From NCBI RefSeq assembly GCF_026571515.1, contig NW_026867385.1, positions 124,001-188,000 of the forward strand: a stretch of 64,000 nt of DNA, in the 5' to 3' direction. Positions 9,645-44,500 of the stretch are shown piece after piece. Under the pieces are notes generated by a model. The model was given only the letters and a program-made list of their open reading frames with translations. It was not told the DNA's origin and did no database searches. The DNA is from Ruditapes philippinarum. Its lineage: Eukaryota. Position 1 is the stretch's first letter, and the number at the start of each line of letters is the position of its first letter. Position numbers and translations under genes: made by a program.

Positions 9645-12600
9645 ATAAAAGACGGTAACTTCTATAAACGTCTTGGCCAATTTTAAAATAAGTGCTTTTT
9701 AATAATTTAATTTTAGAAGTCTTAATCTTAGTATGGGATTGCCCCATCTTCCTCCCATGGCAGAGGTTGTACGTAGTGACTACCCTGTCATGGGGGATAT
9801 GGTATGCACATAAACACATGTACGGATATAACAATAAGTAATTAAACATCAGCTCCCCCTTTTTTTAAAAGGTTATAAATGAAGTATATGCTCGCCCATA
9901 TGGTCTCTTTCCGGTGGCGAGGGTAAACAAACCCAAACACACACACACATTCCATTGTCATATCGCAACATGCACGAATAAAACTAGAAAAACGAAGGTT
10001 ACTATACTTTAGCCTACTTTAAAATTCAGCTAAACGAATTAAATGTACTTCTCGTTTGTGGCAAGCTGCGGCGTTGTAATAATAATTCTAATTGGTACTG
10101 CAATTTTGAAATATAATCATTAAGTCAATTGATGAAATGTTTGTATCATGCAAATGTCACATTCATTTTCTGTTCCTGCAATTAAGAAACCTTTATGACA
10201 TTATATGTTCTCTTTTCCGTAATACTTGAAACACTAGCTGATTTTATTAAGTCACGTTTAAGTGTTCGTTTGGAATTATTGAAATATCGTCTGCTACAAG
10301 AATATATCTATGACGTAGGTGTTGACATATCGGAGATTCCCGGCAATCCTAATCAAGTTTACAGTCTTTCAATCAGAAAGAAAAATGAATGTTTAGTTTC
10401 CGATAACAAAATGTTTTAGGGTCTTATTCTTCATGAACTGGCTTGATGCTTTTTTGCATATGATGCCTTGCGAAAAAATGTACTTTTTTGCTTTTGCTTG
10501 TCTGTCCGTGGAAATTAGGTCTTTATTGAAAGTACACTGAATTATCTGAAGTAAACATAATAGATTTCCATCTACAAACTTTAAATATTTATTTTATGTG
10601 TTGATCGAAGTGAACTCCAAGAAAAATATGGTGAATAATAAACAGACACGTTTGAAGACAGTAACATAAAAAGATAGGGTTATGGTTTAGACTTTAATGG
10701 TAAGGTCATAATCGAATTTAACTCGTAATTTTAACAAATTATGCACGCAAAAAGTGCAAATTAACTATAAATTATTACTTTGGAACGAAATTAAAAATTA
10801 AAATATAGGTCATCAGTATATATATAATCTGATATAATCTTATTTAATCAGTCAACAAAAACATAAATCAATTTAAACATTTATTGGAGGTATATTAATG
10901 TTTGATACCAGTTACTTTTTCCATGTTTGCAGATTAGGACCTTTCAGAGCAAATACTTTGTTTTTCTGTCTCTGTTTTGGACTTGATGAATTCTATTGCA
11001 CAAACGCCACTGCAACAATCAATACACGTTAAAACCAAACAACAATGTTTCCAATCAGCGCAAAAGCACTGATGACGTCAGTCTACTTGTTTTTCATAAG
11101 AACAACAACTATAGTAAAACATCACGCTGTGAAGTCATCTCGGAATGTGTCTTTTAATTATTGCTGTTATATGTTGATATTGTCCGATTTTTGAAGAATG
11201 GATAATAGTTGGACATTTTAATGACAACGCAAAGTAAAACTATATGAAAACTTCTTTTCTGATATATTTCGTTTTTTATTGATTTTGCAATTTCGAGCTT
11301 TTTGAAAATGTCATTTAAATGTTTCAAGATAAATGATTAATATGTATTTTACCAAAATGTGGATACTGTAGACCATTCCTGAATAGATAACTTTCAAATC
11401 TGCTAATGAGAATTCGAATCCCTCTTTTTTGTTGTTGTTGTTGTTGTTGTTTTGTTTGTAAAAAATGATGGTTATACAAATACAAATTTCAAATTCCTTC
11501 TCTTTCTGTATACTTCCCTGAATGACGGAAGAATTTATACACGGATCAGGTTAAAAGAGCTTTTAATGATACAGAAATATTTCTTTTTCATAGCGATAAA
11601 CAATTTCTTACTTGCATTCATCTCATTATAATTTTTTTTAACATTCATAAAATGTCACGTATTAATTTTATAAAAAATGAGAGATCTGATTATTCTTTTG
11701 AAAATGCATGATTGTCAATTTTATAAAACATTTATAAAAAACATGATTTTGTAGTAAATGCCAATAACTTGTTTATTGTTGGCCTAAAATCAACATTCTT
11801 TCAGAAGTATCACTAATTATAGTATGAAGAGGCAATATGTCACAATTTTATATACATTAAATATTTGAACAGTCACCTGCTGAACTGAAAACAAAAATAT
11901 TTGACTAGCTTTCATTTTTTAAACTGTTTATTTTTTATTATGAAGATTTTAACCTGAAAATTTAAAAGTAGCTGCCCAACAAAGAGAAACATCATTTGTG
12001 GTAAATTGTTACAGAAATACTAAAGAGGGGTGTTTTGCTTTTGTTTGTTTTTTTTCTGTTTTTTTGTTTGTTTGTTTTTTTTTTTAGTATAATAATTTAT
12101 TTTCTTGATATTAGATATATTCGATTTCTGAAGAATGCATTACAGTCTAGCAATTTTACAGAGGTGCACATGAAAAACTATCTAAAAATTTCTTTCATGT
12201 CATTTTACAAGTTTGAGCTATTTCAAATGAAGCTTTTAAGATTTGAAGATAAAGGTTTCAGTATAATTTGCTCAAATTCCTGATTATGTGTATCATAATC
12301 TGCTAGATCTTATTTTTTATGGAGGATGAAGGTCAAAATCCTCCATATCCACTCTCTGAATGATGAAAAAATTATCCAATAAGCAGATCATTAAGCTTTC
12401 ACTATACTGAAAATTTTGCGCTTGAAGGCAATTAATAGTGACTTGCTTATTTTCATCTTAAAATTCCTTCTATCTTAAATGTCACGTACTGATTTTATAA
12501 AATTGAGACATTAAATTTTGTGCTAAAACGCATGGACTTGACCTTTACAAAACGTTAAAATAGAGTGAAATAGATTCCATAAAGAAGTCCAAAAAAGGCA

Positions 12601-14207
12601 AATCGAAATGGTGCAGGCTCGGTTTGATTGGCCCTGTTCATTGACGTTACTAAAAAGTTCAAGCTACGGTCCAAGCCCCTCTAGCACCTGCTTAAGCAGA
12701 ATTCAACATTAAACGTCAAATTGTATTTTTTATCTTTTTAATTATGATTTTGTGAAGGGCAATGACTTGTTTATCTTGAGAAAAATTATTGGAATGAATT
12801 CAAGATATATTGAAAATGTATATCCCTGTTTACGGTATGGTGTGGTATAATATCACTATTACAAATACATTGAACTTTGTAACTTTTAAATAGACCAGCT
12901 TCTGGTTTGTAAAAGAATAAAACTGTCCGCTATCTTCTTGGGGTTATAGGATGTAAATTAAATTTAAGGCGTTTTGGCATTTTAATGACAATTCTAATGA
13001 ATACTACATCAGTGTGGGATTTTGTTAAAAGCAATTTCTCCTCAGAAATGAAGAAATATTTATTTCTTTATCTAGACTGGTCAATCAGTTTTATAACCTT
13101 AATGGTATAAAAACATGTTAGATGGTTTCTACCAAAATTAAATAGCGCTAAATATAAAATAATATGTAACAAAAGGCTGCAAAATATACTCTAAACAGTA
13201 TTTTGACGTTCATACAAGATAATAAATCCCTATAAATGTACTAATTGCCAAAAAGCAACTGAAGAAGAAGACAGTTCAGGTAATTGGTTAACGAGTACCT
13301 TGGAAACTATAAAAATGAATTCATTTCTGGGGCGTAATGGGGCCTTGATACAAAATTCTGTTGTTTTTGTGGTTGTTTTAATTGTTATTGTAGCTTTTTT
13401 TAATATGTCACGTTTGAGTGTTTTCCTGGAATTATTAAAAAAATTCGTCTGCTGACAAGAAATACATCTATGACGTTTATTTAACAAATCGCTGATTCCC
13501 GCAAATTTGTCAAGGCAGTCATATGGGAAAGTAAATTCTTAAGTTCTAGAAGACGTGGCGTAATTTATTTTTCGTGAGGAACTGGCATTAGGCGCTGATG
13601 AGAGTCACACATTACAATTAAGATACTTTCTGTATCACTTATGCTTATCTGTCTTCGAAAATTAGGACTTCTCTGAAAGTATTTTGAGTTTACATATTTA
13701 AAAAGCATTGTCTTTAATTTATGCTTATGAACGTATTGAACTACAAGAAAAATGTACTAAAATATTTTAATAAAATAAAGACCATTCGTTCGTTTGTTTG
13801 TGTGTTTTGTATTTTGTTTTTGTTTTTGGGAGGGTGTTGTTGTTATTTTGTTGTTGTTTGTTTTTGGTGTTTTTTGTTTTTTTGTATTTTTGAATATGGT
13901 AGCATGAAAGAAAAGGTAATGGATTACAATTTCATGATAGGCTACACCGTCTGATTTCACACCTAACATAAGCAAAATGTGATAAAATGCAAATGAAATA
14001 TTAACTTTTAGTTTGGAATGCAATGGGGACACATTGGAAACCTTTATTATCAGTTTGTTCCATGTTAATCGTTTATGATTTAGCGTAGGTACTTTTGTGC
14101 CGAATACTCGTAGTTATATTTTACTTCTAGAGCGAAATACATGTACTTCCATTGACTTCACAAAACAAGAGCATCGACTGTAGTAAAACATTACACTGTG
14201 AATTCTT

Positions 14208-14330: not shown

Positions 14331-15536
14331 CTAAGCCAAAGTCTAAAACTGATGCTCCTATCTTCTTTTCTTTAAATTGTATTTGAAATTTCGAGTTTTT
14401 TGGGAGTGTCATTAAAATATTCCAAGATAATTTTTTATGTATTTTACTCTAATATAGATATTGCATACCATTCCTGGCTGGTCTATTTATTAATCTGCTG
14501 TTGAGAATTCGTATGTCCTGTATTTGTTTCTGGAAAATGATGAGAATGCATTAATTAAAAAGTTCAAAAAATCGCCATGTTATCTTTTTGTTTACTTAAC
14601 TGAATGATACTTCTTCCCTAAATGATGAAAAACTTTATCCAAGAATCAGATCATTATTAAGTGGTCTAAACGAACCTTTTCATAACATTTTACTCTAAAA
14701 AGCGATCGTTCCCTGTTTGTATTCATGTCATTATTTCATAACTTTTCTAAAATGTCTGGTACTGATTAATTTGATTAAATTGAGAGATTTAAACGCATGG
14801 CCGTTAATATTTATATAATGTTTACCATTATCTTGTAACGGGCAATGACTTTTGTATCTGAAATAAACTCTTGCCATAAAATCAAGACATATTGAAAATG
14901 AATATCAATACTTTCTGGTATGGTGAGGCATAATTTCGCTTTCATAAAAAACAGTACATAAATGGAACACGTGACCTGTAGACTTTTTAAATTGAACTGT
15001 CTGTTACAAATATTTGTTATTATTACGTGATTTTTTTATTTGTCGTAAGCTTTGGCGTCGTTGTTATAATAATAATAATACTAATTGAATGAGTACAATA
15101 TCAGTTTCATTTTTAAATAGAATCATTCACTCAAATGTCACATATATATATTCTATTCACGCAATTAAGAAACCTCCGATATTAATGACACTTATTTCAC
15201 TTATTATACTTTAACACTAGGTGATTTTATCAAGTTACGTTAAAGTGTCCACTGGCATTGAAATATCGTCTGCTGCAATGCAACATATATCTATGACGTA
15301 GGTTTTGACATATAGCTGATTCCCGCAAATTTGTACCAGAAAATCATTTCCAGACGACCAAATGTAATTTAGCGTTTTCTTAACGAACTGGCATTTTGGT
15401 GCTGATATGTGTCAGTTATTATAATTAAGATACTTTCTGTATCATTTTATTCATTTATGCTTATCTGTCTATTTCAGAAAAGTATTTGAAGTTTCAATAA
15501 TTAATATTACGTTTTACATATTTTATCTTTAATTAA

Positions 15537-16290: not shown

Positions 16291-18289
16291 CATAGACTCC
16301 AGTTATTTGTACAAGTTCAGCCGCCTCTTACGATCACGCAAAGACAAACGGTGGCTGCAATTCTTATGCTTCAACCATTAAAGGCGATCCTCTGCCACAA
16401 TTATTGTAGATAACCAATTACATATTCTATGTTCATGGTATTTTAGCGTTGACATTTCAAACTCATATTTTTGTGATATATTATTACAACAAATTAAGCG
16501 TAAATTGTTTTAACCAAAGAGCATTTTTTCAATAAACACAAAGGCATTGCTGACGTCAATCTCACTTTTTTTTCATAAAAACAACAATTGTAGTAAAACC
16601 CTTGTTAGCCTTTTTTGAGTCTTGTCTTTTGATTGGTATTGTGATAAAATGATATTGTCTGATTTCTTAAGTCGACCATTTCAATGGCAGTGTAAATGTT
16701 AAAGTATTTGGAAAATTCTATTCTGCTATAGTCCTTTTTTTTTTTTATTTTCAAAATTTGAGATTTCTCAGAAAAGTTTTTAGTAAAACACGTATTTTAC
16801 CCCAAAAGTAAATATTTTAAAAAAAATTTCCCGTTTTTCTTAAACGCAACTGAAAATTTGGGTTTCCCTTTATTTTTTATGAAAATGATACACTACAATT
16901 TTAATGTTCAAAAGCCTTCATATTCTGCTACAGCTCTTTAAGCTTAAAATTTAAATCTAGAATAAGATCAATATTAAGTGGTTAACGAGGCTTTTCACAA
17001 TATCAAATGTTTTGCTCTTCTTGTATTTATCTTTTTTATTTCTTAACATTTATAAAATGTCACGTACTGATTTTATAAACATGTGGGATTTTATTTCTTT
17101 TTAAGCACATGAACGTTACAATTATTATAGAATGTTTAACATGATTTTTGTAAAGGGCAATGACTTGTTCATATGTTACTCAACTTTGATTGTCTCCTCA
17201 GCACTCTTGTTAGGGGTATGTGAAAATAAAAGACCAGTTTTTGCTTAACTTTATACCCATTGTTGAATGTACTCTTCATTTATTTCTTAGTTACTATAGA
17301 AAGGGTAGCTGAGTTTACGAAAATCCCGGATTTGCAAACTTATTCCGGAAGCTGTTTGTATAAGATTATAAGCATAAATTCAAGATTTATTTGTTTTAAA
17401 AATATTTTTTACTGTTTATGGTACGGTGTGGCATAATATCGCTAGTTTACATACACATTGAACATGGAAACCATAATCTGTTGACTTTTTTTAAATAGAC
17501 AAGCTTCATTTTTTATGAACTGTCTGTAACCCAGTTCGGGGATTATATGATGAAAAATTTACTTTTGTAAAACTGTGGCGTTGTTATATGTGGCAATATC
17601 ATAGTCTAAATAATTACTTCATCAGTTTTATTTTTAAATATAATTATATATTCACCCGGTAAAATGTTAATACTATGCAAATGTCATATGTTTTGACATA
17701 TACGTATATGATTCCCGCAAATTAGTGCAAGACAATTATATGAAACAGTAAGTTCAAGACGACGAAATGCTATTCAATATTGAATTCTTGGCAAATGGAC
17801 ATTAAGTGCTGATGCGTCTGCATTAGTTGTGCTTTTCTGCCATTGAAAATCAAGTCTTTATTGAAAGAACATGCATTTCAATGTTCAATATTTAAAATTT
17901 CGCTGAACAAAAGTAAATAACGCAGATCATCCCTGAAAAAGTTACTCTCTAAATCGGCTATTAAAAGTTCGAATTTCTCTTTATTGTTCTTAGAAATTAT
18001 GATTTTTTTACAATAATAAAGTTTTATATTTTTCTTCTGTTTATCTCAAACAACGGAATAAAGCTTATCCAAGAATCAGAACATTATTAAGCGGATAACG
18101 AGTATATTTTTCTCTGCTCTTTGCATAAGGTATGTATTTGCAATGAAATACATGACTGTTGATACCTACTTATTTCCAAATTAGAACTGACCAACTTTTA
18201 ATATTTAAGACTGTCTATTTTTTTTTAATTTATAAGTAGCGTTGATGATTTAATGTTGCTATATACCCTCTTGATTTCAAAATAAGGTG

Positions 18290-18928
18290 GATACAAAAGA
18301 GCAGAAATGCAAACGGGTTTCCATATATATCCTTGTGTAAGGCTTTGGCTCATCATCTACACTTTTGACTGAGATTGTTTTTGTTGTTTTTTTCATTATG
18401 ATTTTTATTATTTTGTTGTTGTTTTTTTTAAATCAGACGGATAAATCTAATTTTGAATTTAGCAATCTTTAATTACTGTGACCTTTAAATTTTGGCTGAA
18501 TTAACTTAACTGAAAATAATGAAAACAAAACATTTACTAGCTGATAGCATAAATTGCATCGAAGGTTATTTTTGATATTTTACCCACATCAGACGGTGAA
18601 TATGATAGTTTTTACTAATCTGGACACCAGACCTGTGGCTTTTCTCATGGGGTAAGAGTAAAAGATTTCTTGGAGAAATGATTTAAACGATGACCAATGA
18701 AAATTCTACTTTTGATGCTCATAAACAATAATTCTTATCCAACCTACCTTATCTAATTCCCTTTCCAAAACCTTCTTTGCGGTTTTGAACACTTACCAAT
18801 GTAAATATGGTTTTTAAATGCGAACAAGCCTTAATTGTTGCCACTGGGCATTTAACGTCGCACGGAATCCTCAGCAATATACTTATGCTATTCTTAGACC
18901 ATATCCCTAGTGTTGTAGCAGCAAAACC
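18290..18928 (-). pseudogene. Possible decayed two-exon coding fragment of an unknown gene (paralogs at ~26715-27333, ~34405-35013, ~39975-40591)
   Basis: Minus strand acceptor TCTTTTATAG| then a composite reading GFAATTLGIWSKNSISILLRIPCDRSATTLNAQWQQLRLVRI*KPYLHW*VFKTAKKVLERELDKVGWIRIIVYEHQK*NFHWSSFKSFLQEIFYSYPMRK. Then a ~74-nt GT...TTTTCATTATTTTCAG intron and KLIQPNLKVTVIKDC*IQN*IYPSD...SAKSVEDDEPKTQGYIWKLVFISALLY. All copies have stops and frameshifts; family not recognised. Confidence 0.3.
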
Positions 18929-19789
18929 CTATAAAAGATATTTTAATAACATATATTTATCCTTTTGACTTTCTATTACTTATTAAAATCCAGACATTCT
19001 TTTTCCAAATATAAATTAGTATAATTAATATACTATTCAAAATTTGTTTTCATATTTATTTCCAAAATTAACAAGAAATAATAAATAACTAACTAAACAA
19101 TTCAATAACATGTGATGTTTGTGTATATTTAACATTTATTTATTCCATTAAATTTGTAATGTACATGCATATTATTTTGTGTTTCACTAAATAAGCATGT
19201 AATCACATCACTTCGTATACCTTTATGAGTAAATATTTTGGGTTTGTGATGTTATTATGACGATTTTGTAAATAATCAGTTTTAATGTTCATTTTTTTTT
19301 TATTTTCATGCAGACTTAATATATATAAAAATCTGAACACACAGTTTTCGACCTTAACCTTTAATGGCATTATTTACAAGTGTTATTTAATAATTGCAAC
19401 ACTAACTTATTTTATTAAGTCACGTTTAAGTGTTCGTTGGTTTAACTGAAATGTCGTCTGCAGAGAGAAAAGAATTGTCTATGACGTAGGTTTTGACATA
19501 TTGCTGATTCTCGCAGAATTGATATTCTAATCTTTATAAAGCAATCTTATGGGAAATCTGTGATATTTCAATAGAAATGAAAAATGAATATTCTGTTCCA
19601 GACGACAAAATGTAATTTCAATTTTCTAGATAAACTGACCTGAAGCGTTGGTGCGAGTCAAAAAATCATACTGTTATATCAATAGATAGTTATATTTATA
19701 TTAATGTGTCTCTAAATCAAACAAATGGTCATATGGTAATTCCATACAGCAAAACTGTAAATGATGCAGGTTGTTTCTTTACTAGTTAA

Positions 19790-20427
19790 CCCTTTCCCCC
19801 ATGAGCATATTGTGAAAAATGGCCGTTTTCACTGAAAAGCCTCCTGTTACAAGTTCAAACTGCTATGAAACTATGAAAAATGCTTCAATACTAATCAAAC
19901 TTGGCACAAATGTTGACTGGACCATTGCCTTTGTAACGACATGCTCAGTCTTAAATTTCCTGTTACCATGGCAACGAGGGGACATCTCAAAATTGCCAAA
20001 AATCACTATTTTGCCTCGAATTTTTTCCATCAAAATTTATTTCAAAGTGCTGCAACTTCTCAAGCGATTGAGATAGAGTCAAAGCTTTTCAGCGTGGTTA
20101 CACGTTACATTATGATCGACCTGGGGTCATTTTTTAAGCCTCTCACAAGTCCAAAAGTTTTTCTTGGCGAAATGAGGGGGACTACGCCCCCCCTTCAAAC
20201 CCCCCTAACAGAAGGTGGGCTACATCCCCCCTTCTGGCAACCCCCTGATGTATCGTTTTGGATGGGGGCGGCGCCGAAAAAGTGCTCATTTTTTTTAAGC
20301 AACATTTTCTCAAACGAAAAACATGTGTTTTTGGGCCCAAATAAGGACATTTTTTCACTATTTTAGGCCCTAACAAAGGGGGGAGGGGTCGAAAGTGCGT
20401 TGTTTCGCGTATATATGGGGTAAAGGG
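19790..20427. mobile_element. piggyBac-like non-autonomous element (TTAA flanks, CCCTT...AAGGG 13-bp TIRs), present only in U1
   Basis: TTAA|CCCTTTCCCCCAT ... ATGGGGTAAAGGG|TTAA. Empty single TTAA sites at 28190, 35869 and 41434. Confidence 0.85.
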
Positions 20428-31384: not shown

Positions 31385-31628
31385 GGTGGCGACTGAAACG
31401 AAATGGTTGAATCCCGCAACTTCATTGAAACACGTTCACCAATACGATGGAGCATTCAAAAATGTGACTTGTCGAGATGAAACTTGAACTTGTCCGTGAA
31501 AAGAAGAAGTGTCCAGTCCTGCTACGTGAAGGAATGTATCCTCTGCATCAGGCAAAACGTGCAACGCGATGATGTCGCTTGGGAAAAGCACGTATGGCTG
31601 AATGTCTTGGACATATGCCGCTTTTAAA
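31385..31628 (-). pseudogene. Tc1 transposase remnant, U2
   Basis: Paralog of 23745-23995. Confidence 0.75.
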
Positions 31629-32465
31629 ATTGCTTTTTTTCCAGAAATTTATGAATACCTAAATCTATTTTCATTGGTAATATATATAAAATCCTATGAC
31701 GTAATAAAACATTTGCCATTTCGTAAATTGGTGAGTGACAGTAGTGTTTCATTTATTACAATCGCACCGTAAATATAAACTGTCTCATTTTAGATCTCAA
31801 ATATAGAGATATTGATTAACTTTAAACAATAGTTCTAAGCTCATGTTCAAATAGCCCATTTAAGAATCATGAACAAGTTGATATAAATGCATGTAACATA
31901 CATCTTGATGATACATTGCTTTCTATGAAAATGAATACATTTGCTCTTTATCATAAAATATGTATTTTCAATGAAATACATGTTAAACTTTAACCTTTTT
32001 ACCTACTTATTTCCAAAATGGACTTGACCAACTTTCCATATTTGTTTTTTATTGTATAAGTAACGTTGATTATTAAGTGTTGCTTAAGCGTTGCTTTGTA
32101 CCAACTTGATATCAAAATAAGATCGTACAAATCCCATTGGCCATAAATATGGCGGGGTGGATGAGGGAAATTATGTGCCTGGAATTAACGTAGAAACTAG
32201 TTCAGACATGACTACATGATAAAATAGATAACTGTTTGACCGATATTAAATAATTCTGCACAAAAATAAAGGGATAGTGGTGAACTAAATAATTGCTAGT
32301 GATTTTACCGCAATAGTTATGCATATAACTATGCTGATGTATTCACGCCATCTGGCACCGGCTAGATAGGCACTCAATTTTTAACAACTAATGTGCTAGA
32401 ATCAATCATCCCGAAAGACCAGAAGAATATAACAACTCTGGATGTAACATGGGTCTTAACAACTG

Positions 32466-32905
32466 ACCCCGCATTCACAAAGAAAAAATTAGGATCAAAT
32501 GATCCTGATTTTATTTTCATTGTTTTATGACATTAGAAATTATCGTATTTTGCTAGAATTAAATGGTACTTATTCAAAATTTAAAGAATTACTGATTTGC
32601 AAAAACAAACTTATTTTGGGATAAAATCGACGAATTAAAAAACAAAATTAGAAATAATTGTATAAAAACAAAATGAGGATCAGTTTTCGGATCAAGATCA
32701 AAATTTGGATCAACTGTAAATGCCCATATCTTGCAAATATAACAATAAATTTACTCTAAAATTTCATAAACATGCCATTTCAAGTCCAATTTTATCAAGT
32801 TATTATTAAATATTTAATCTATAATGATTAACAATGGAGAATATTTGAGTTTTTAAATTTGATCCTGATTTTGATCCTGATCCTTAAATCTTTGTGAACA
32901 CGGGC
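32466..32905. mobile_element. Harbinger-like MITE, U3 copy
   Basis: Paralog of 24861-25288 at the same position in the unit. Confidence 0.75.
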
Positions 32906-35900
32906 CTACTGTTGTATAAAGTATAAAAATATAACCAAATAAATCATTTGGAAAAAAGATGATCCCTCGGAAGCATTTAAAACAACAAAATTACATGAAA
33001 ATTGAAGACCCGGTTTGGTTAAGTCTGTACATGAGTAATAATGAAAAAGTGCAATATACCTCACGCCTCTACCAACGGCTTGAGCGCTACTCAATTTTTT
33101 TATACTTAATGTCCTGGAATCAATGATCCCGAAATACCAGAAAAATATAACAACACTGAACCCTTACCACGTCGCCAATTATCTTAAATAGGCCGTATCT
33201 TTTATAAGGTTAAAACGATTCATCTCTTTAAAGGTTAATTTAAAACCAACAACATAATAGGGGACAATATAGATCATGATCAGACAGTCTTTAATTGAGG
33301 ACTTCTGAGGTCATCAAGCATGAAATTAACACTTCTTTCTTGGTATCAATGAAGCCGCCTACATCTAGAATATTTTCTTTTGTATGATTTCCTCTTTTTT
33401 GCAATACGATAAGAACATGAGCAAATTTGTTATTCAACAGATACATTTTATTATTATCATTATTGCCACTACAATATAGTTACATGGTATTGCATTTTGT
33501 ATTGACGTTTAATGTAATTAAGGCTTCATGAATACTCAGTATATAATGTTCGCTGCCCTGCAGGATAGCTTTGCTGGGATCTTATGATATGACGAGGACC
33601 GCGTTCTGTAAAAGTCGCTTTGCCATAATGGTCTGCGTTCTCATACTAATAATTTGTATGAATTTATATAAACTCCATTTAGGCTTTAGCACGGTATCAT
33701 ATGACTGATGAATTATCAAAGTAACTGGAAAATACCATTATTGAGAAACATTCATTCTATTGCAGTTCAAAGAAAATTCCAGGTACTTGCAAAGTTTATA
33801 CGAAAGGCCAATATCATTATCAGAAGTTCAAAACCAATCATTTATTTTGAAAAGAGCCAATCAGAAAATATCATTTCATTGATATTAGGTACGGAATGAC
33901 TAATTGTGAGTTCATAATTTCTGTAAATGATTAAAGCGTTGGAGTAAATAATAACTTAGAACACAAAATATTGAACGTTTTTAGACATTTACCTGTCATA
34001 TTATTAGTAAGAACTATCTTAAAGAGATACGCACGATTTCTTAGTCAGTTCTGCGTGATTTCTAAATGAGAACAAATATAGTAAACAAGATCAACAAGGA
34101 AAGGCGACGTTCAATGAACGCAACCCCAAACACGACCCAGCAACAAGAACCGATGGATCAAGTTGTTATGTATTAAGACAGGTCCAATAAAATATCAGAC
34201 CACGATTATTTGTTACACGTTCTATTTCTAGGTTAAAGTTGTGTACAATTGTTTAAGCTTTTATTGTTATCATGTATTTTTTGTAAAATATTGTTCGTGT
34301 AGATATTTCTATTCTTTTTCTTTTTCAATTTTTCAATTATTCAGTATATTTCAATAATAAAGACAGAACCAAATGACAATTACATAAAATCTAAAATAAG
34401 CAAACCTGTAGATTTTGACATACAAAAGAGCAGAAATAAAAACTAGTTTCCATATATACCCTTGTGTTTTTGGCTCATCATCTTCTACGCTTTTGGCTGA
34501 GGCTGGTTTCTTTTTTATTTTATTATTATTATTTCCATTTTTTAATCAGATAAAGCTAATTTTGAATTTAGTAATCTTTGATTACTGTGACCTTTTAAAT
34601 TCCGGGGAAAATAATGAAAACACAACTTTTACTAGCTGATAACATAAATTGCATTAAAGGTTATTTTTAATAGTTTATTACAACTGATGGTGAATAGGTA
34701 GTCATTTATCTGAGGCGTTTCGTGGGGTAAAAGTAAAAGATTTCTTGGAGAAAGGGTAAAATGATGACCAATGAAAATCCTACTTTTGAAACGCATAGAC
34801 AAGCACTCTTATCCAAACTACCTTACCTAATGCTTTCCAAAACCTTCTTTGGGGTTTTGAAAACTTACAAATTTAAATATGGTTTTTAAATGTGTACAAG
34901 TCTTATTTGTTGCCACTGGGCATTTAACGTCGATGCGGACCGATCGCACGGAATCCTCAGCAATATACTTATGCTATTCTTAGAAAAGATCCCTAGTGTT
35001 GTAGCAGCAAAACCCTATAAAAGATATTTAAATAACATATATTTCTCCTTTTGACTTTCTATTACTTATGAAAATCCAGACATACTTTTTCCAAATATGA
35101 ATTAGTATAAGTAATTACTATTCAAAATTTTATTCATATTCATTTCCAAAATTAACAAGAAATAATAAATAAATAACTAAACAATTAAAATAACATGTGA
35201 TATTTGTGTATATTTAACATTTATTTATTCCATTATATTTGTAATGTACATGCATATTATTTTGTGTTTCACTAAATAAGCATGTAATCACATCACTTCG
35301 TATACCTTTATGAGTAAATATTTTGGGTTTGTGATGTTATTATGACGATTTTGTAAATAATTAGTTTCAAGGTTCATTTTTTTTATTTTCATGCAGACTT
35401 AATATATATAAAAATCTGAACACACAGTTTTCGACCTTAACCTTTAATGGCATGATTTACAAGTGTTATTTAATAATTGCAACACTAACTTATTTTATTA
35501 AGTCACGTTTAAGTGTTCGTTGGATTAACTGAAATGTCGTCTGCAGAGAGAAAAGAATTGTCTATGACGTAGGTTTTGACATATTGCTGATTCTCGCAGA
35601 ATTGATATTCCAATCTTTATAAAGCAATCTTATGGGAAATCTGTGATATTTCAATAGAAATGAAAAATGAATATTCTGTTCCAGACGACAAAATGTAATT
35701 TCAATTTTCTAGATAAACTGACCTGAAGCGTTGGTGCGAGTCAAAAATTCATACTGTTATATCAATAGATAGTTATATTTATATTAATGTGTCTCTAAAT
35801 CAAACAAATGGTCATATGGTAATTCCATACAGCAAAACTGTAAATGATGCAGGTTGTTTCTTTACTAGTTAAGGACGGCTTATTGTTCTAAAGCAAGGAA

Positions 35901-38900
35901 GAACCAAAATCAACCTACTCGTTCAACCATTGTCTATGAATACTCCGTACAGACACGCATTGAACGCCAATGGTTAAAAAATTCCGCGCGTATTTATTGA
36001 AAAGGGGTGGATTATAATGAAATTATTTTCCTGTTACAGTGATAATAAATAAGGCTATGATTAGAAAAAGTCTTATCAGTCAATAAATAACACATTAATC
36101 GACGAAAAGTATTTAGAACACATAATTGTACAAAAGTATACGTAATCGATATGATGGCCGTCTAGAATTGCGTTGATACAGACACATTAAAACATTAACA
36201 TGTTCACATTTGTATAACTGTTTTTCTCTGTTGTGTAACACTTCACTGTGCAATATAAACATTCGTACTTTAGGAGTTTTTATGACCTGAATGAATTTTT
36301 GACTGCACATACACCACTGCAGCGATCGATTAGCGTATTAACCAATAACCAATACTTTCAATCAGCGCAAAGGCACTGATGACGTAAGTCCACTTGTTTT
36401 TTAATAAGTACACCAGCTCCAATAAACATGTCACGCTCTTTTGCGTTCTAGAAATTCCACTTACGAATATTTAGACGTTCTGATGAAATAAAAGTATGAT
36501 AGAAAAGATCAGAACAGCAATTTCTTTGTTTTTATATTCTACTGGAGAGAATTGTATAAGAAATTATTTCATTTTACAAATATGAAATGATTTAAAAAAG
36601 AAATTTCAGCAAAGTATTCAACTGCTGTTGAAGCATGTTTCTTCATCTATTTAACAAATATCACTACTTTGTACTTAAGATTGATGTTAATCCGATAAAA
36701 GAAAACCTAATCCAAATTTATACCCTGAAAGTAGGAAAGTAATGACCAAGGGGAGAAAGCAATATTCAACGTTACCTGTCGATTTATGTTAACCAAAATA
36801 GAAATAATTCACTTACCTTTAAAATGTAAATAAGTATAAAGAAATATTTACAAACAGACATTTAAAAAACATAATTGGGGTGAATACCGTGCCTGGCACT
36901 TAATTACCACCACATATACACTTTTACAACATGACCGCCGACGCCTCCTGTCCTACTGATCTACTTCAATTTTTATAATACAAAACAAAATGTTTGTAAA
37001 AGTCTAGTAAGAAGATACCCCTAGAGAGCAATTAAAATCTTTCAGACTTAAAGTTGCTAGAGCTTGTTTAATTTACAATAGTTCAACATACACGCTTTCT
37101 CCCACCTCCTCCTAAAATATTTAAAATAACACTTATAAATCATCTTTTTTTTTAAAGTTTTGTAAACATCTTATGCATTAACCATATAAGGTTATTTTAA
37201 ACAATTATGATATGAATAAACATACATGTTAATCATTAAAGACGCTGACATTTACTGGAAGCAATGTCTGGCTGAGATAAATGTACCTGTTGTAGAAAAA
37301 AAACAATATCCACAATTTTCGTTTAAATGTCATCAGCAGATACATATTTCTTAATAAATTTTAATTTCTAAAAAGCAAATGGCAAATGTTATTAATTTCG
37401 TGTCAATTGATGAAACAAATAATCTGAATATTAAAGTAAATAAAGAAATGATAACTCAAAGACTTTGTTTTGAAGGTCATCATACATATAAAAAAATGTG
37501 GGTTTAACGTTAGGGCATTTTGTCTTGTTTTTACATCGTTATAAGCAATCATATAATGTTACCAAAGGTTAATGTTGCAGACAAAGACAACCTTTATCTA
37601 CAATTATTATCTGCCATTTGTATCGATTTACTCTTTTGACTGGATGAATAAGTGGTAAAAAGATACCAAAGACCTTTTTCTGATCTTTTAATCTGTTTAC
37701 TTAGAAATTTGTATCACCTTAATAAAGATGAATGCTAAGATATTGTCATTAAACAAAATATCTCGGGCAAGGTTACTGCTCTTGATATTGTTATTTTTTT
37801 TCTTTCTTATGTTCATGGAATGTCACGTACTGCCACAAAATGATAAACTGCATTATTTGATAATTATTGATAGCACATTACCAAGATTTTATCAAACATT
37901 TAACATTTAAAATCAAAAGGACAATGACTTGTTTACATCTCAAAAGATCACTGCTCAACCGCCTAGATACATTAAAAATAAAAAGAAAGAAAAATTATAT
38001 GACTTTAAGTCACGTTTGGGTGATCATTGGAATTCTGAAATGTCATCTGCTGAGAAAGAAGAAATGGCTATGACGTAGGTTTTGACATATTGCTGATTTC
38101 TGGAAAAGAAAACCTTATTCCAATCTGTACAAAGCAATCAATCTTATCATCAATAATATTGTATTGTACTAATTGTAATGAAGAATACAATGATGTCAGT
38201 GAACCTTTTTAGAGAAACGTTAAATGTGTTGTGCTTTAGTCTTAAGATTTCAAAACTTTAGTATGATACTGAGGGCTTTCTTGAACAAAATTGTCAGTCA
38301 TGCAAAATTTTTCTTTAAATTTTTTTATATTTAGAAAAGTAACAAGAATTTATATCTGATATTTTTGTAAAATTTTATTTATTTTACAAAAAAACTAAAA
38401 CAACGCCTAACTTCATTTGTTTTAATTGTATACACAATAATATAACGTTTTTGTAGTAAAAGACCCTTTCTCAGTGAGCAATATTTTTTACCTGTGTAGT
38501 CTGACCAGGCCCTTGAACTTTTGGCTGCACATCATTTTGTATTTCGTTATTGAAATCCTTTGATTTTTTAAATGACTTTACTAAATTCAAAGCAGAACAA
38601 GCATTAAAAATAGCTAAGCAGATTCAGTGTAAACCCTCAAAACATCTGAAACATGATTTATGTACATGTTCAATTGACAGATACACGATATTTGTTTACA
38701 GAATCAATTCGCATAATTAGTGTTATTTTCATTATTTTGTCCAATGTGTTACACATTCAATATGTAAAACATAGAACAAAGTAATGAAAATAGCGTTAAT
38801 AGTACGAAACGTATTGTGATTCGCAATATTTCATACCATGAAACAATTGTCCTTTTTTGTTGAAACGTACGAAAAATTTAAGAAATTCGTTTAGTTTTAA

Positions 38901-38999
38901 GATAAGATATTCCGAAAACGTTACATTTTCTCATATTAATTGATGTCCATATCCTCACAATCACACATCACATATCAGGTAACCTTAATGGCTGATTTT

Positions 39000-39240
39000 T
39001 GGTGGCGACCGAAAGGAAATAGCTGCATCACTGAAACATGTTCACCAATACGATGGAGCATCCAAAAACGTGAGTTACTGCTGTCGAGATGATACTTGAA
39101 CTTATCCGAGAAAAGAACACATTCCAAGTCCTGCTACGTGAAGAAAATGTATCCTCTGCATCAGGCAAAACGTGCTACACGATGATGTCGCTGGGGAAAA
39201 TTACGTATGGCTGAATGTATCGGACATATGCCGCTTTTGA
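39000..39240 (-). pseudogene. Tc1 transposase remnant, U3
   Basis: Paralog of 23745-23995. Confidence 0.75.
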
Positions 39241-41500
39241 AATTGCTTTTTTCCAGAAATTTATAAATACCTATGTCTATATCATCGGTAATATATATAA
39301 AATCCTATGACGTAATAAAACATTTGCCATTTCGTAAATTGGTGAGTGACAGAAGTGTTTCATTTATTACAATTGCTACATTGATATTAGGTACGGAATG
39401 ACTAATTGTGAGTTCATAATTTCTGTAAATGATTAAAGCGTTGGAGTAAATAATAACTTAGAACATAAAAGATTGAAAGTTTTTAGACATTCATCTTAAA
39501 GAGATACGCATGATTTCTTAGTCAGTTCTGCGTGATTTCTAATTGAGAACAAAATATAGTAAACAAGATCAACAAGGAAAGGCGACGTTCAATGAACGCA
39601 ACCCCAACACGACTCAGCAACAAGAACCGATGGAACAAGTTGTTATTTATTAAAACAGGTCCAATAAAATATCAGACCACGATTATTTGTTACACGTTCT
39701 ATTTCTAGGTTAAAGTTGTGTACAATTGTTTAAGCTTTTATTGTTTTCACTTAGCATATCATGTATTTTTTGTAAAATATTGTTCGTGTAGATATTTCTA
39801 TTCTTTTTCTTTTTTAAATTTTCAATTATAAGATTTTTAATGTGTAAAATTCTTACAGATAACTTTTAGCAGGAGAAAAATCACACAAAAGACCTGAAAC
39901 AAGTGTGTAATCTGAGTATCTCTAATAAAAAAGACAGAACCAAATGAAATTTACATAAAATTTAAAATAAGCAAACCTGTAGATTTTGACATACAAAAGA
40001 GCAGAAATGAAAACTAGTTTCCATATATTTTTGTTTTTGACTCATCATCTTCTACGCTTTTGGCTGAGGCTGGTTTGTTTTTTATTTTTTATTTTTTTCC
40101 ATTTTTTAATCAGATAAAGCTAATTTTGAATTTTGTAATCTTTGATTACTGTGACCTTTTAAATTCCGGGGAAAATAAAGAAAACACAAATTTTACTAGC
40201 TGATAACATAAATTGCATTAAAGGTTATTTTTAATAGTTTATTACAACTGATGGTGAATAGGTAGTCATTTATCTGATCGCGTGACAAGTGGCGTTCCAT
40301 GGGGTAAAAGTAAAAGATTTCTTGGAGAAAGGGTAAAATGATGACCAATAAAAATCCTTGTTTTGATACGCATAGACAAGCACTCTTATCCAAACTACCT
40401 TACCTAATGCCTTCCAAAACCTTCTTTGCGGTTTTGAAAACTTACAAATTTAAATATGGTTTTTAAATGTGTACAAGCCTTTATTGTTGCAACTGGGCAT
40501 TTAACGTCGTTGCGGACCGATCGCACGGAGTCCTCAGCAATATACTTATGCTATTCTTAGACCAGATCCCTAGTGTTGTAGCAGCAAAATCCTATAAAAG
40601 ATATTTAAATAACATATATTTATCCTTTTGACTTTCTATTACTTATCAAAATCCAGACATTCTTTTTCCAAATATGAATTAGTATAAGTAATAACTATTC
40701 AAAATTTGTTTTCATATTCATTTCCAAAATTAACAAGAAATAGTAAATAACTAAACAATTAAATAACATGTGATATTTGTGTATATTTAACATTTATTTA
40801 TTCCATTATATTTGTAATGTATATGCATATTATTTTGTGTTTCACTAAATAAGCATGTAATCACATCACTTTGTATACCTTTATGAGTAACTAGTTTGGG
40901 TTTGTGTTATTATGACGATTTTGTAAATAATTTGTTTTAATGTTCATTTTTTCCATGCAGACTTAATATATATAAAAATCTGAACACATATTTTTTCAAC
41001 CTTAACCTTTAATGGCATTATTTACAAGTGTTATTTAATAATTGCAACACGAACTTATTTCATTAAGTCACGTTTAAGTGTTCGTTGGATTAACTGAAAT
41101 GTCGTCTGCAGAGAGAAAAGAATTGTCTATGACGTAGGTTTTGACATATTGCTGATTCTCGCATAATTGATATTCCAATCTTTATAAAGCAATCTTATGG
41201 GAAATCTGTGATATTTCAATCGAAATGAAAAATGAATATTCTGTTCCAGACGACAAAATGTAATTTCAATTTTCTAGATAAACTGACCTGAAGCGTTGGT
41301 GCGAGTCAAAAATTCATACTGTTATATCAATAGATAGTTATATTTATATTAATGTGTCTCTAAATCAAACAAATGGTTATATGGTAATTCCATACAGCAA
41401 AGCTGTAAATGATGCAGGTTGTTTCTTTACTGGTTAAGGACGGCTTATTGTTCTAAAACAAGGAAGAACCCAAATCAACCTACTCTTTCAACCATTGTCT

Positions 41501-41586
41501 ATGAATACTCCGTACAGACAAGCATGGAACGCCAATGGTTAAAATGAATACTCCGTACAGACAAGCATGGAACGCCAATGGTTAAA
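41501..41586. repeat. ~43-bp tandem duplication private to U4
   Basis: ATGAATACTCCGTACAGACAAGCATGGAACGCCAATGGTTAAA x2; single copy in U2 and U3. Confidence 0.9.
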
Positions 41587-44500
41587 AGATTCCTCGCGTA
41601 TTTATTGAAAAGGGATTGATTATAATGAAATTATTTTCCTGTAACAGTGATAATAAATACGGTAATGATTAGAAGAAGTCTCATCAGTCAATAAATAACA
41701 CATTAATAGCCTTAATAATGTGTATGAAAAATATTTAGAACACATAATTGTACAAAAGAATACGTAACCGATATGTTGGCTGTCTAGAATTGCGTTTATA
41801 CAGACACATTAAAACATTAACGTGTTCCCATTTGTATAATGTTTTTCTCTGCTGCGTAACACTACACTGTACAATATAAACATTCGTACTTTAGGAGTTT
41901 TTATGACCTGAATGAATTCCATTGACTGCACGTACACCGCTGCAGCGATCGATACGCGTACCAATACTTTCAATCAGCGCAAAAAGGACTGCATGATGAC
42001 GTAAGTCCACTAGTTTTTTTAATAAGTACACCAGCTCCAATAAACATGTCACGCTCTTTTGCGTTCTAGAAATTCCACTTACGAATGTTTAGACGTTCTG
42101 ATAAAATAAAAGTATGATTGAAAAGATCAGACCAGCAATTTCTTTGTTTTTATATTCTACTGGAGAGAGTTGTATAAGAAGTTATTTTATTTTACAAATA
42201 TGAAATAATTTTAAAAAAAATTTCAGCAAAGTACTCAACTGCTGTTGAAGCATGTTTCTTCATATATTTTGCTATGATTTCTAATATTAACAAATATCAC
42301 TACTTTGTACTTTACTTTGATGTTAATCCGATAAAAGAAAACCTAATCCAAATTTATACCCTGAAAGTAGGAAAGTAATGACCAAGGGGAGAAAGCAATA
42401 TTCAACGTTACCTGTCGATTTTATGTTAACCAAAATAAAAATAATTCACTTACCTATAAAATGTAAATAAGTATAAAGAAATATTTACAAACAGACATTT
42501 AAAAAACATAATTGGGGTGAAGACCGTGCCCGGCACTTAATTACCACCACATACACTTTTTACAACATGACCGCCGACGCCTCCTGTTCTACTGATCTAC
42601 TTCAATTTTTATAATACAAAACAAAATGTCTGTAAAAGTCTAGTAAGAAGATACCCCTAGAGAGCAATTAAAATCTTTCAGACTTAAAGTTGCTAGAGCT
42701 TGTTTAATAAACAATAGTTCAACATACACGCTTTCTCCCACCTCCTCCTAAAATATTTAAAATAACACTTGTAAATCATACTTTTTTAAGTTTTGAAAAC
42801 ATCTTATGCATTAACCATATAAGGTGATTTTAAACAATTATGATATGAATAAACAGACATGTTAATCATTAAAGACGCTGACATTTACTGGAAGCAATGT
42901 CTGGCTGAGATAAATGTACCTGTTGTAGAAAAAACAATATCCACAATTTTCGTTTAAATGTCATAAGAAGATATATATTTCTTAATAAATTTTAATTTCT
43001 AAAAGGCAAATGGCAAATGTTATTAATTTCATGTCAATTGATGAAACAAATAATCTGAATATTAAAATAAATAAAGAAATGATAACTCAAAGACTTTGTT
43101 TTGAAGGTCATCATACATATAAAAAAATGTGGGCTTAAGGTTAGTGCATTTTGTCTTGTTTACATCGTTAATAAGCAATCATATAATGTTACTAAAGGTT
43201 AATGTTGCAGACAAAGACAACCTTTATCTACAATTATTATCTACCATTTGTATCGATTTACTCTTTTGGCTGGATAAATAAATGGTAAATAAATTCCAAA
43301 GACCTTTTTCTGATCTTCTAACCTGTTTACTTAGAAATTTGTATAATAAATAAAAGTCGCATTTTTTTCCAAGAAGTAGCTCGTCTCATCTTAAGGTGAA
43401 TGCTAAGATATTGTCATTAAACAAAAACAATCTCGAGCAAGGTTACTGCTCTTGATGTCTTTATTTTTTTCTTTCTTATGTTCATGGAATGTTACGTACT
43501 GCCACAAAATGATAACACTGCATTATTTGATACTAATTGATAACACATTACCAACAAATAACATTAAAATCAAAAGGACAATGACTTGTTTATATCTCAA
43601 AAGATCATTGCTCAACCGCCTAGATACATTTAAAATAAAAAGAAAGAAAATATGATATTACAAGTCACGTTTGGGTGATCATTGGAATTCTGAAATGTCA
43701 TCTGCTGAGTTAAAAGAAATGGCTATGACGTAGGTTTTGACATATTGCTGATTTCTGGAAAAAAAAATATTCCAATCTGTACAAAGCAATCAATCTTATC
43801 ATCAATAAGATTGTATTGTACTAATTGTAATACAAAATACAACGATGTCGATGAAACATTAAATGTGTTATGCTTTAGACTTTAGATTTCAAACATTTGA
43901 GTATAATACTGAGGGCTATCTTGAACACAACTGTTAGTCATGTAAAGATTTTTTCTTTTAAAATGTTTTGTTGATTAGAAAAGTAACAAGAATTTATATC
44001 TGATATTTTTGTAAAAGTTAAAGTATTTTACCAAAACTGAAAAAATGCCTTATTTCAATTCTATAAATGTATACTACTTAACATTTTTTTGCGTTAAAAG
44101 CCCCTTCCCCAAGAAGCAATATTCTTACCCGTGCAGTCTGACCAGGCCCTTGAACTTATATATTTTTGTATTTTGTTATTGAAATCCTTTTACTTTTTCA
44201 AATTGACTTTACCAAATACAAAGCAGGACAAATCCTAAACAGCAGATAAAAAGTAAACGGAGGAATTGATATGTACAATTGACCGATAAATAATATTTGT
44301 TTCTAGTATAAGTTTCGTATTATTTATATTCTTTTCATTGTTCTGTTCTATGTTTTACTCATTACACAACATTTGACACAATGAGTTTTTTTTTGTTGTA
44401 ACGTTAGAAAAATGTAAAAATTGTTTTGGATATACACATAAGTTTTAGTATAAAATATTCTGAAAAGGTATATAAAAAAGTTTTCAGCAAGGTTTTTAAG

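What the first reader, a model, noticed from the sequence alone, without database searches (positions are those of the whole stretch)
10251..43758. A ~95-bp non-coding module repeated 12 times across 33 kb: candidate amplified enhancer or alternative-first-exon array
Seen: copies start at 10251, 13407, 15234, 17690 (partial), 19419, 22714, 27831, 30380, 35502, 38009, 41067 and 43664, all in the same orientation. The blocks GTCACGTTT, GAAAT.TCGTCTGC, CTATGACGTAGG, TTGACATAT and GCTGATTCCCGC persist, including CpGs, while the spacers vary in length and sequence. The two module types within one young unit share little else nearby. Established: TGACGT(A/C) is a CREB/ATF-type bZIP core, CACGT a bHLH(-PAS) core, GTCTG a Smad core and TTCCCGC an E2F-like core. 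Inference: conserved blocks with free spacers suggest a multi-factor cis-regulatory module multiplied by duplication. GAC|GTAGGT is also a plausible plus-strand donor, so copies could be alternative non-coding first exons spliced to shared downstream exons (58863, 59350). On the minus strand each copy has a pyrimidine tract plus (N)AGCAG acceptor, a third possible reading.
Basis: partly seen in the sequence, partly recalled or inferred. Interest (0 to 1): 0.8.

Follow-up and report, generated by a model that had tools for sequence, protein, structure and literature searches.

The report
Tandemly copied conserved non-coding regulatory module
A roughly 90-base non-coding DNA module found only at this one locus has been multiplied 14 times by nested tandem duplication and has stayed conserved while its surroundings decayed, so it is most likely a duplicated gene-control element, although no RNA from it was seen.

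Summary
All 12 listed copies are at the stated coordinates on the + strand. Two more lie upstream of the window.

- **Not a transposon.** Whole-genome BLAST and a 22-mer scan find the module only on this contig, apart from one 2-mismatch hit at control level.
- **Conserved.** Identity peaks at the module: 0.58-0.79 against mostly 0.29-0.52 in flanks. Across five diverged lineages, 45 of 98 module columns are invariant, against 3 of 20 upstream and 3 of 56 downstream.
- **Not coding.** No reading frame survives in all copies and spacer lengths vary.
- **Not a structured RNA.** Searches give nothing.
- **TGACGT is kept where the GT donor is lost**. The eight young copies add CCAAT- and TATA-like boxes 40-55 bp downstream.
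- **No transcripts.** Four RNA-seq runs give depth 0 over both module types.

Best reading: a selectively constrained cis-regulatory, promoter-type module multiplied by segmental duplication. It was silent in the sampled libraries and its target is unknown. The alternative-first-exon reading has no support. Interest is modest.

The parts
10251..10339 (+). Module copy, O type. Two near-identical sisters lie upstream of the window at -17882 and -4911.
13407..13498 (+). Module copy, old and most diverged. It has TGACGTTTA: the CRE half-site is kept and the GTAGGT donor context is lost.
15234..15322 (+). Module copy, old lineage.
17681..17727 (+). Partial copy (3' half only). TTGACATAT and GATTCCCGC are kept and the CRE is lost.
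   Evidence: E 0.0034
19419..19510 (+). Module copy, A type, young unit 1.
22714..22804 (+). Module copy, B type, young unit 1.
27831..27914 (+). Module copy, A type, young unit 2 (9-base deletion in spacer 1). Boxes at 27831, 27858, 27886 (TGACGT), 27897 and 27910.
27931..27945 (+). CCAAT-like box (TTCCAATCT) and TATAAAG, 45-53 bp after the TGACGT box. The equivalent pair occurs in all 4 A copies (TATAAAG) and all 4 B copies (TACAAAG). It is absent from O and old copies.
27823..28165 (+). Most conserved stretch of the four young units (98.5-99.5% against 82-97% elsewhere): the A module plus about 230 bp downstream.
   Evidence: (family D1)
30380..30470 (+). Module copy, B type, young unit 2.
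35502..35593 (+). Module copy, A type, young unit 3.
38009..38099 (+). Module copy, B type, young unit 3.
41067..41158 (+). Module copy, A type, young unit 4.
43664..43754 (+). Module copy, B type, young unit 4 (last copy).
28613..28763 (+). Second conserved block ('block 2'), about 780 bp after each A or O module: CCAAT, CAATCAGCGC and TGATGACGTAAGT. Sister copies at 10975-11119, 16507-16620, 20965-21154, 36226-36461 and 41847-42079. Old copies read TGACGTCAGT or TGACGTCAAT. Indels are not multiples of 3.
18291..45250 (+). Four young tandem units of about 5.6-8.4 kb (88-95% identical), each with one A and one B module.

Best explanation
The module is the selectively constrained core of a cis-regulatory element of proximal-promoter type. 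It was multiplied passively when the DNA carrying it was duplicated in tandem several times: three units of about 13-15 kb, three older single copies, and four units of about 7.7 kb with two modules each. It consists of five short boxes in fixed order and orientation. Two of them have ACGT cores, GTCACGTT and TATGACGTAGG, the latter holding the CREB/ATF-type half-site TGACGT. The spacing of the 5' half is free and that of the 3' half is rigid. Inferred mechanism: sequence-specific transcription factors, most plausibly bZIP proteins on the ACGT boxes, bind each copy. In the eight young copies a CCAAT-like and a TATA-like box follow 40-55 bp downstream. Those copies would therefore start + strand transcription near +140 to +150 from the module start (about 27970 in the 27831 copy), giving a short non-coding first exon or lncRNA. 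Shown here: the copies, their restriction to one locus, the conservation peak, and the lack of coding frame, RNA structure and reads. Inferred: factor binding, promoter activity, the start site and the target.
For: - **One locus only.** 12 of 12 BLAST hits and 12 of 13 22-mer hits are on this contig, with a control of 0 forward and 1 reverse. The profile search finds 13 full copies plus 1 partial in 224 kb.
- **Conservation peaks at the module.** Mean pairwise identity is 0.58-0.79 there and mostly 0.29-0.52 elsewhere across six diverged units. Among five lineages, 45 of 98 columns are invariant, against 3 of 20 upstream and 3 of 56 downstream. The A module plus 230 bp is the best-conserved part of the young units.
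- **Box-and-spacer pattern.** Spacers measure 27-38, 21-25 and 24-25 bases. No frame is open in all 13 full copies, and 7 of 13 are closed in all six frames.
- **No RNA structure.** MFE z-scores are -0.85 and -0.79. RNAalifold gives -2.9 kcal/mol with 0 compensatory pairs. Rfam gives nothing at the module.
- **TGACGT tracks conservation, the donor does not.** Copy 13407 keeps TGACGT but reads GTTTAT. Block 2 reads TGACGTAAGT in young copies and TGACGTCAGT or TGACGTCAAT in old ones.
- **Downstream boxes.** CCAAT-like plus TATAAAG or TACAAAG follow in all 8 young copies.
- **Orientation.** All copies are on the same strand.
Against: - No transcript. Four RNA-seq runs from four studies (random-primed, polyA, cDNA, oligo-dT; 1.1-1.9 Gb read from each) gave depth 0 over the A module, block 2 and the B module. 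At 90% likeness the sister A and B copies would also have been laid.
- No indexed RNA run holds a twentieth or more of the words of 27400-35400.
- The O and old copies lack the TATA-like box, so a promoter architecture is seen only in 8 of 14 copies.
- No target gene or downstream exon was identified. The nearest recognisable + strand coding exons are about 70 kb downstream of the last copy.
- Factor binding is inferred from motif resemblance alone.
- High identity among young copies could come from gene conversion rather than selection.
- No other species could be compared.
Confidence: 0.5

Rival explanations
1. The copies form a distal enhancer array, an amplified or 'shadow' enhancer. They have no transcript of their own and act together on a neighbouring gene.
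For: It rests on the same conservation and box-and-spacer evidence. Absence of reads fits an enhancer better than a promoter. The O and old copies have no TATA-like box. A conserved shoulder with further short blocks extends about 250-350 bp in the old copies.
Against: Strict same-strand order is simply inherited through duplication, so it does not discriminate. CCAAT- and TATA-like boxes at promoter-like distances occur in 8 copies. No target gene is identified, and the region between the BTB-Kelch gene and the next coding exons is gene-poor.
Confidence: 0.2
2. The copies are alternative non-coding (or ATG-bearing) first exons ending at GAC|GTAGGT and spliced to shared downstream exons, as in protocadherin or UGT1A clusters.
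For: GTAGGT follows GAC in 12 of 14 copies. A and B copies read ATG plus 11 codons up to the donor, and the 33-base distance is kept in A, B and the 15234 copy (my reading). Notes from other agents report promoter/first-exon cassette arrays elsewhere in this genome (unverified).
Against: Depth is 0, and no listed joint or loose end lies at the donor in four runs. The O and 13407 copies have 29- and 31-base distances and no ATG. The donor matches only 6 of 9 consensus positions and is lost in 13407 while TGACGT stays. Block 2 keeps TGACGT but not the GT context. The proposed exon at 59350 is closed in all frames (my reading). No constant exons were found.
Confidence: 0.07
3. The module has no function. 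It stayed similar through gene conversion between paralogous units, or through a locally low mutation rate.
For: Tandem arrays undergo conversion. Identity among young units varies in broad plateaus, 96-99.5% over about 1 kb and again at 29286-29930. There is no transcript.
Against: Conversion would homogenise a tract, not preserve 5-10-base boxes while the spacers between them change in length and sequence. The five lineages are 67-83% identical in the module while the flanks are near the random-alignment level. The B copies lost two CpGs, yet both ACGT cores are invariant in 13 of 13 full copies.
Confidence: 0.13
4. On the minus strand each copy is a splice acceptor (pyrimidine tract plus GCAG) followed by a short terminal exon with AATAAA. 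It would be driven from block 2 acting as a minus-strand promoter.
For: GCAG|A(C/T)GA is present in all 13 full copies, as the reverse complement of TC(G/A)TCTGC. An AATAAA lies just beyond it in O, 15234 and A copies (my reading). Block 2 has CRE, two CCAAT-type boxes and a TATA-like run in minus order (my reading).
Against: The strongest conservation, CTATGACGTAGGTTTTGACATAT, would be intronic. B copies lack the AATAAA. All three frames after the acceptor close within 43 bases (my reading). Depth is 0 on both strands.
Confidence: 0.04
5. It is a small RNA gene (snRNA-like, spliced-leader, miRNA) or a fragment of a transposable element.
For: The units are tandem and same-strand. GUAGGUUUUGA loosely recalls a donor followed by an Sm-like site (my recollection). 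The 5' end of one abundant repeat family (at least 962 candidates) reads TATGACGTCGCTTTGAGATAT, which resembles the CRE/box-4 part.
Against: Rfam has no hit at the module. There is no fold signal or covariation. There are zero reads even in the random-primed library, which argues strongly against an abundant spliced leader. The module occurs only at this locus. The repeat-family resemblance is 10 bits, does not extend, and typical copies differ by 4 or more positions plus an indel.
Confidence: 0.03

Closest known systems
CRE-containing TATA promoters (CREB/ATF target promoters)
   Same: A TGACGT half-site is invariant in 13 of 13 full copies. In the 8 young copies it lies about 45-55 bp upstream of a TATA-like box with a CCAAT-like box between them. 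A second TGACGT(A/C)A block with CCAAT boxes lies about 780 bp downstream.
   Different: No start site, no transcript and no binding or cAMP data. The site is TGACGTAG, not the palindromic TGACGTCA. The O and old copies have no TATA-like box.
Variable-first-exon clusters (clustered protocadherins, UGT1A)
   Same: Same-orientation tandem units, each carrying a conserved promoter-type sequence element and a donor-like GT.
   Different: No variable coding exon, no constant exons identified, no junction reads, and donor conservation is secondary to TGACGT.
Duplicated or shadow enhancers created by segmental tandem duplication
   Same: A short block-conserved non-coding module copied with its surrounding DNA, with flanks that decay or fill with transposon debris.
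   Different: No chromatin or reporter evidence, and no target gene known.
Promoter/first-exon cassette arrays reported by this scan elsewhere in the same genome (s1-793997 tolloid, s1-794010 muscarinic receptor)
   Same: Tandem amplification of non-coding 5' cassettes in the same genome (notes by other AI agents, not checked here).
   Different: Those arrays sit directly upstream of an identifiable gene. Here no gene body is within about 60 kb downstream.

Membership tests
Dispersed repeat / transposable element fragment | Many copies scattered over the genome | tested here: not met
   12 of 12 BLAST hits and 12 of 13 22-mer hits (up to 2 mismatches) are on this one contig, with a control of 0 forward and 1 reverse. 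The profile search finds no further copy in 224 kb.
Protein-coding exon | A reading frame kept open across copies, with indels in multiples of three | tested here: not met
   No frame is open in all 13 full copies and 7 of 13 are closed in all six frames. Spacer lengths are 27-38, 21/23/25 and 24/25.
Structured non-coding RNA gene | Match to a known family, or a stable conserved fold with compensatory changes | tested here: not met
   Rfam has no match at the module at gathering score or at E up to 5. Fold z-scores are -0.85 and -0.79. The consensus fold is -2.9 kcal/mol with 0 of 8 pairs compensatory.
Spliced-leader RNA gene array | Abundant transcripts carrying the leader, with reads ending at the donor | tested here: not met
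   Depth is 0 in bin 27800-27999 and in bins 30200-30599 in four runs, including a random-primed one.
Alternative-first-exon cluster (protocadherin/UGT1A type) | Each unit ends in a functional donor spliced to shared constant exons | tested here: not met
   No reads or listed junctions at 2 laid copies, nor at their 6 sisters within 90% likeness, in four runs. Other tissues and the O and old copies were not tested.
Alternative-first-exon cluster (protocadherin/UGT1A type) | A conserved promoter element before each unit, all in the same orientation | tested here: met
   14 of 14 copies are on the + strand and the boxes are conserved.
CRE-type (CREB/ATF) promoter | A TGACGT half or full site close upstream of a TATA box and start site | tested here: inconclusive
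   TGACGT is in 13 of 13 full copies. A TATA-like box 45-55 bp downstream is in 8 of 14 copies. No start site is known.
CRE-type (CREB/ATF) promoter | CREB/ATF occupancy and cAMP inducibility | not testable with these tools
   This needs ChIP or reporter assays.
Constrained cis-regulatory module | Conservation above neutral flanks, concentrated in short boxes with free spacers | tested here: met
   This compares paralogues within one genome only; no cross-species test was possible.

The most novel reading that the evidence does not exclude
The 14 copies form a promoter-choice or enhancer-dosage array. Each would be a cAMP- or stress-responsive ACGT-box module that fires only in a tissue, stage or stimulus not sampled here. 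They would drive alternative non-coding first exons, or jointly boost a distant + strand gene such as the unidentified one ending about 72 kb downstream of the last copy. That would make this a lineage-specific case of regulatory innovation by amplifying a control element rather than a gene.
Probability: 0.1. Interest if true: 0.6.

Novelty: new member of a known kind. Interest (0 to 1): 0.3.

Why it matters
If the reading is right, this is a clean natural example of purifying selection preserving transcription-factor-site-sized boxes in paralogous copies of a regulatory element while everything around them decays. Together with similar arrays noted elsewhere in this genome (unverified notes), it suggests that tandem amplification of 5' regulatory cassettes is a recurrent mode of genome change in this clam. 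It offers 14 natural variants of one module for reporter dissection. As it stands the function is inferred from sequence only, and no transcript or target is known, so the value is modest.

Tried and rejected
- **Transposon or satellite origin: rejected.** Searches place the module and block 2 at this locus only. The single off-locus 22-mer hit (C15090, 2 mismatches) lies in the 5' end of an abundant repeat family with at least 962 candidates. Typical members read TATGACGTCGCTTTGAGATAT. The similarity is 10 bits and does not extend. I judged it chance-level; exaptation is not strictly excluded.
- **Coding exon: rejected**. An ATG-plus-11-codon reading in A and B copies is not shared by the O and 13407 copies.
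- **Structured RNA, tRNA or a known RNA family: rejected**.
- **Spliced-leader idea: rejected** on zero reads.
- **Weak read pile-ups come from other loci.**
  - The pile at 30800-30999 traces to a short repeat also present at window-equivalent 109266-109339, which carries the variant bases seen in the reads.
  - Cover at 32200-33200 is at 90-95% likeness with 94-97% of laid reads running on into unlike sequence, which marks a dispersed repeat.
  - A 2-read joint from 27702 to 28912 with 8 unplaced letters was not taken as an intron.
- **Search for a gene body.** Stop-to-stop ORFs of 110 codons or more, and a home-made codon-usage score trained on only about 1,000 codons, found nothing coding inside the array except repeat-like ORFs. 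This method is crude and can miss short exons.
- **Pfam on two candidate downstream exons:** no family.
- **Cross-species comparison:** not possible with these collections. One metagenome scan for the module gave 0 matches.
- **Literature:** two full-text searches. I saw listings and abstract starts only, and none concerned amplified regulatory modules or first-exon arrays in bivalves. No paper was read, and supplements were not consulted.
- **Earlier findings by place:** none for this window.
- **Correction:** my notebook entry 2 says 8 of 13 copies are closed in all frames. The correct count is 7 of 13.

Full report
**Observation.** The window is AT-rich animal DNA, 28-35% G+C in 2-kb windows. 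Each of the 12 listed coordinates holds a same-strand copy of the module, and the one at 17690 is a 3' partial copy. Exact-block counts among the 12 copies are:

| Block | Copies with exact match |
|---|---|
| GTCACGTTT | 10 of 12 |
| TCGTCTGC | 7 of 12 |
| CTATGACGTAGG | 10 of 12 |
| TTGACATAT | 11 of 12 |
| GATTCCCG | 4 of 12 |

None of these occurs on the reverse strand. It reads GATTCTCGC in A copies and GATTTCTGG in B copies.

**Extent and architecture.** The window is bases 124,001-188,000 of a 545,557-base contig in a 1.41-Gb assembly. Two more copies lie upstream at window-equivalent -17882 and -4911. They are 99% and 97% identical to the 10251 copy. A profile built from 13 copies and run over 224 kb (-70,000 to 154,000) returns 13 full copies (E at most 7e-26), the 17681-17727 partial (E 0.0034), and nothing else better than E 1.3. 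Self-comparison shows nested tandem duplication:
- three units of about 13-15 kb (-26,363 to about 12,850), each with one 'O' copy;
- three older diverged copies (13407, 15234, 17690);
- four young units of about 5.6-8.4 kb (18,291 to about 45,250; 88-95% identical), each with an 'A' and a 'B' copy.

**Not a dispersed repeat.** BLAST of a 140-base module against the whole genome gives 12 hits, all on this contig. It missed the two most diverged copies. The 22-mer spanning the TGACGT box and the next box, with up to 2 mismatches, occurs 13 times forward and 0 times reverse. Twelve of those are on this contig, and the reversed control pattern gives 0 forward and 1 reverse. The one outside hit sits in the 5' end of an abundant repeat with at least 962 candidates. 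Its typical copies differ at 4 or more positions plus an indel, and the resemblance is 10 bits and does not extend. I treat this as chance. A second conserved block is also confined to this contig, with 8 hits.

**Conservation peaks at the module.**
- In an alignment of six diverged units, mean pairwise identity in 40-column windows is 0.58-0.79 across the module.
- It is 0.55-0.59 on a shoulder of about 200 bp downstream, and mostly 0.29-0.52 elsewhere. Such a diverged alignment is uncertain outside the conserved parts.
- Taking one copy per lineage (O, 13407, 15234, A, B), 45 of 98 module columns are invariant, against 3 of 20 upstream and 3 of 56 downstream. Pairwise identities are 0.67-0.83.
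- Among the four young units, the highest identity (98.5-99.5%) is at 27823-28165, the A module plus about 230 bp. The rest ranges from 82 to 97% where all units align. The B module shows only a small local peak of 95-96.6%.

**What it is not.**
- No ORF of 90 codons or more overlaps any copy.
- No frame is open in all 13 full copies, and 7 of 13 are closed in all six frames. The three spacers measure 27-38, 21/23/25 and 24/25 bases.
- Rfam gives no match at the module at gathering score or at E up to 5. There are no tRNAs.
- Single-sequence folds are unremarkable, with z-scores of -0.85 and -0.79.
- The alignment fold is -2.9 kcal/mol with 0 of 8 pairs compensatory.

**Anatomy.**
- Two boxes have ACGT cores that are invariant in all 13 full copies: (C/T)ACGTT and TATGACGT.
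- The B lineage lost the other two CpGs (TCG to TCA, and CCCGC or CTCGC to TTTCTGG).
- The donor reading and the TGACGT reading can be separated. Copy 13407 keeps TGACGT but reads GTTTAT. The second conserved block (28613-28763 and sisters, about 780 bp downstream of A and O copies) reads TGATGACGTAAGT in young copies but TGACGTCAGT and TGACGTCAAT in old ones. It sits next to CCAAT-type boxes and has indels that are not multiples of three. What is conserved is the bZIP-type site, not a GT donor.
- In all 8 young copies, a CCAAT-like box (TTCCAATCT) and TATAAAG (A) or TACAAAG (B) follow 40-55 bp after TGACGT. The O and old copies lack this segment.
- That TGACGT is a CREB/ATF-type half-site, and that CCAAT and TATA are core-promoter boxes, is established general knowledge. 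Their occupancy here is inference.

**RNA evidence.** No indexed run on record as RNA holds a twentieth or more of the sampled words of 27400-35400. This is a weak test for a short exon. I laid four raw-read RNA runs from four studies on 27400-33399 at 90% likeness: random-primed, polyA, cDNA and oligo-dT, with 1.1-1.9 Gb read from each. Depth was 0 in all runs and both directions in every 200-base bin from 27800 to 28799 and from 30200 to 30599. No listed joint or loose end lies at the module; 241 further loose ends were not shown. Because A sisters are about 99% identical and B sisters about 92-95% identical there, 8 of the 14 copies were effectively tested. The O and old copies were not. 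Cover at 32200-33200 (90-95% likeness, 94-97% of laid reads running on into unlike sequence) and at 30800-30999 comes from dispersed repeats.

**Context.**
- A BTB-BACK-Kelch ORF lies at -41310 to -39964 on the + strand.
- A Death-domain ORF and a geminin-like exon (below the Pfam cut-off) lie further upstream.
- Downstream lie a LINE-like element at 129-133 kb and a CAF1-family ribonuclease-like exon on the minus strand at 134.7-135.2 kb (bits below the Pfam cut-off).
- An unidentified + strand gene has well-spliced terminal exons at window-equivalent 114,453-115,830.
- A crude codon-usage scan found nothing coding within the array apart from repeat-like ORFs.
- Notes by other agents call this genome the Manila clam and list promoter/first-exon cassette arrays elsewhere in it. 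I did not verify either point.

**Interpretation.** The best-supported reading (confidence 0.5) is a selectively constrained cis-regulatory module of promoter type, multiplied passively by segmental duplication and silent in the sampled libraries.

| Rival | Confidence |
|---|---|
| Enhancer array | 0.2 |
| Non-functional similarity maintained by gene conversion | 0.13 |
| Alternative first exons | 0.07 |
| Minus-strand terminal exon | 0.04 |
| RNA gene or transposon fragment | 0.03 |

Promoter and enhancer readings differ only in whether a start site exists, and that needs CAGE or Iso-Seq.

**Comparison, novelty and limits.** The locus works like a duplicated CRE-type promoter or enhancer and superficially resembles variable-first-exon clusters. 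It fails the transcript and junction test for the latter in the samples available. It is a new, locus-specific instance of a known kind of thing. Two literature searches (listings and abstract starts only) showed nothing on such arrays in bivalves. The limits are:
- there was one reads call;
- tissues were unknown;
- no cross-species data were available;
- there is no chromatin data;
- the gene search was crude;
- supplements were not consulted.

Noticed in passing
window 28613-28763 (sisters 10975-11119, 16507-16620, 20965-21154, 36226-36461, 41847-42079): A second locus-specific conserved block with CCAAT-type boxes and a TGACGT(A/C)A site lies about 780 bp downstream of the A and O modules. 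It is confined to this contig.
   Followed up: partly
window 23392-23494 and 31056-31169, with sisters in the other B units: A palindromic element of about 100 bp gives weak miRNA-family Rfam hits on both strands (35 bits against gathering scores of 95-117). It is probably a MITE-like hairpin.
   Followed up: no
window 31340-31650 and 44590-44890, minus strand: G+C-rich ORF fragments look like Tc1/mariner transposase remnants. The resemblance is recalled and was not tested with Pfam. They lie about 1 kb after each B module.
   Followed up: no
window 32200-33200: A dispersed repeat is expressed from other loci. RNA reads lay at 90-95% likeness with many loose ends, at depths of up to about 85.
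   Followed up: partly
window 19786-20423: An insertion specific to the first young unit includes a 141-aa ORF in a 61% G+C island. It is 76% identical to part of contig C15090, so it is a repeat.
   Followed up: partly
window 46287-47606: A local tandem duplication of a unit of about 657 bp, 94.6% identical.
   Followed up: no
L021:453-1830 (window-equivalent 114,453-115,830), + strand: Three well-spliced terminal coding exons of an unidentified gene, with no Pfam match. These are the nearest + strand coding exons downstream of the array.
   Followed up: partly
L026:8690-9997 (window-equivalent -41310 to -39964), + strand: A long single-exon ORF with BTB, BACK and Kelch domains lies about 13.6 kb upstream of the start of the array.
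   Followed up: partly
L029:2487-2696 and at least 962 candidate places genome-wide: An abundant young repeat (94-95% identical copies). Its 5' end holds an inverted ATATGACGT...ACGTCATAT pair.
   Followed up: partly
window-equivalent 79,649-80,518 (L016/L017 region): A tandem repeat that reads as a long repetitive ORF (units such as ...GNQVAAIVVQATRWQPLW...).
   Followed up: no
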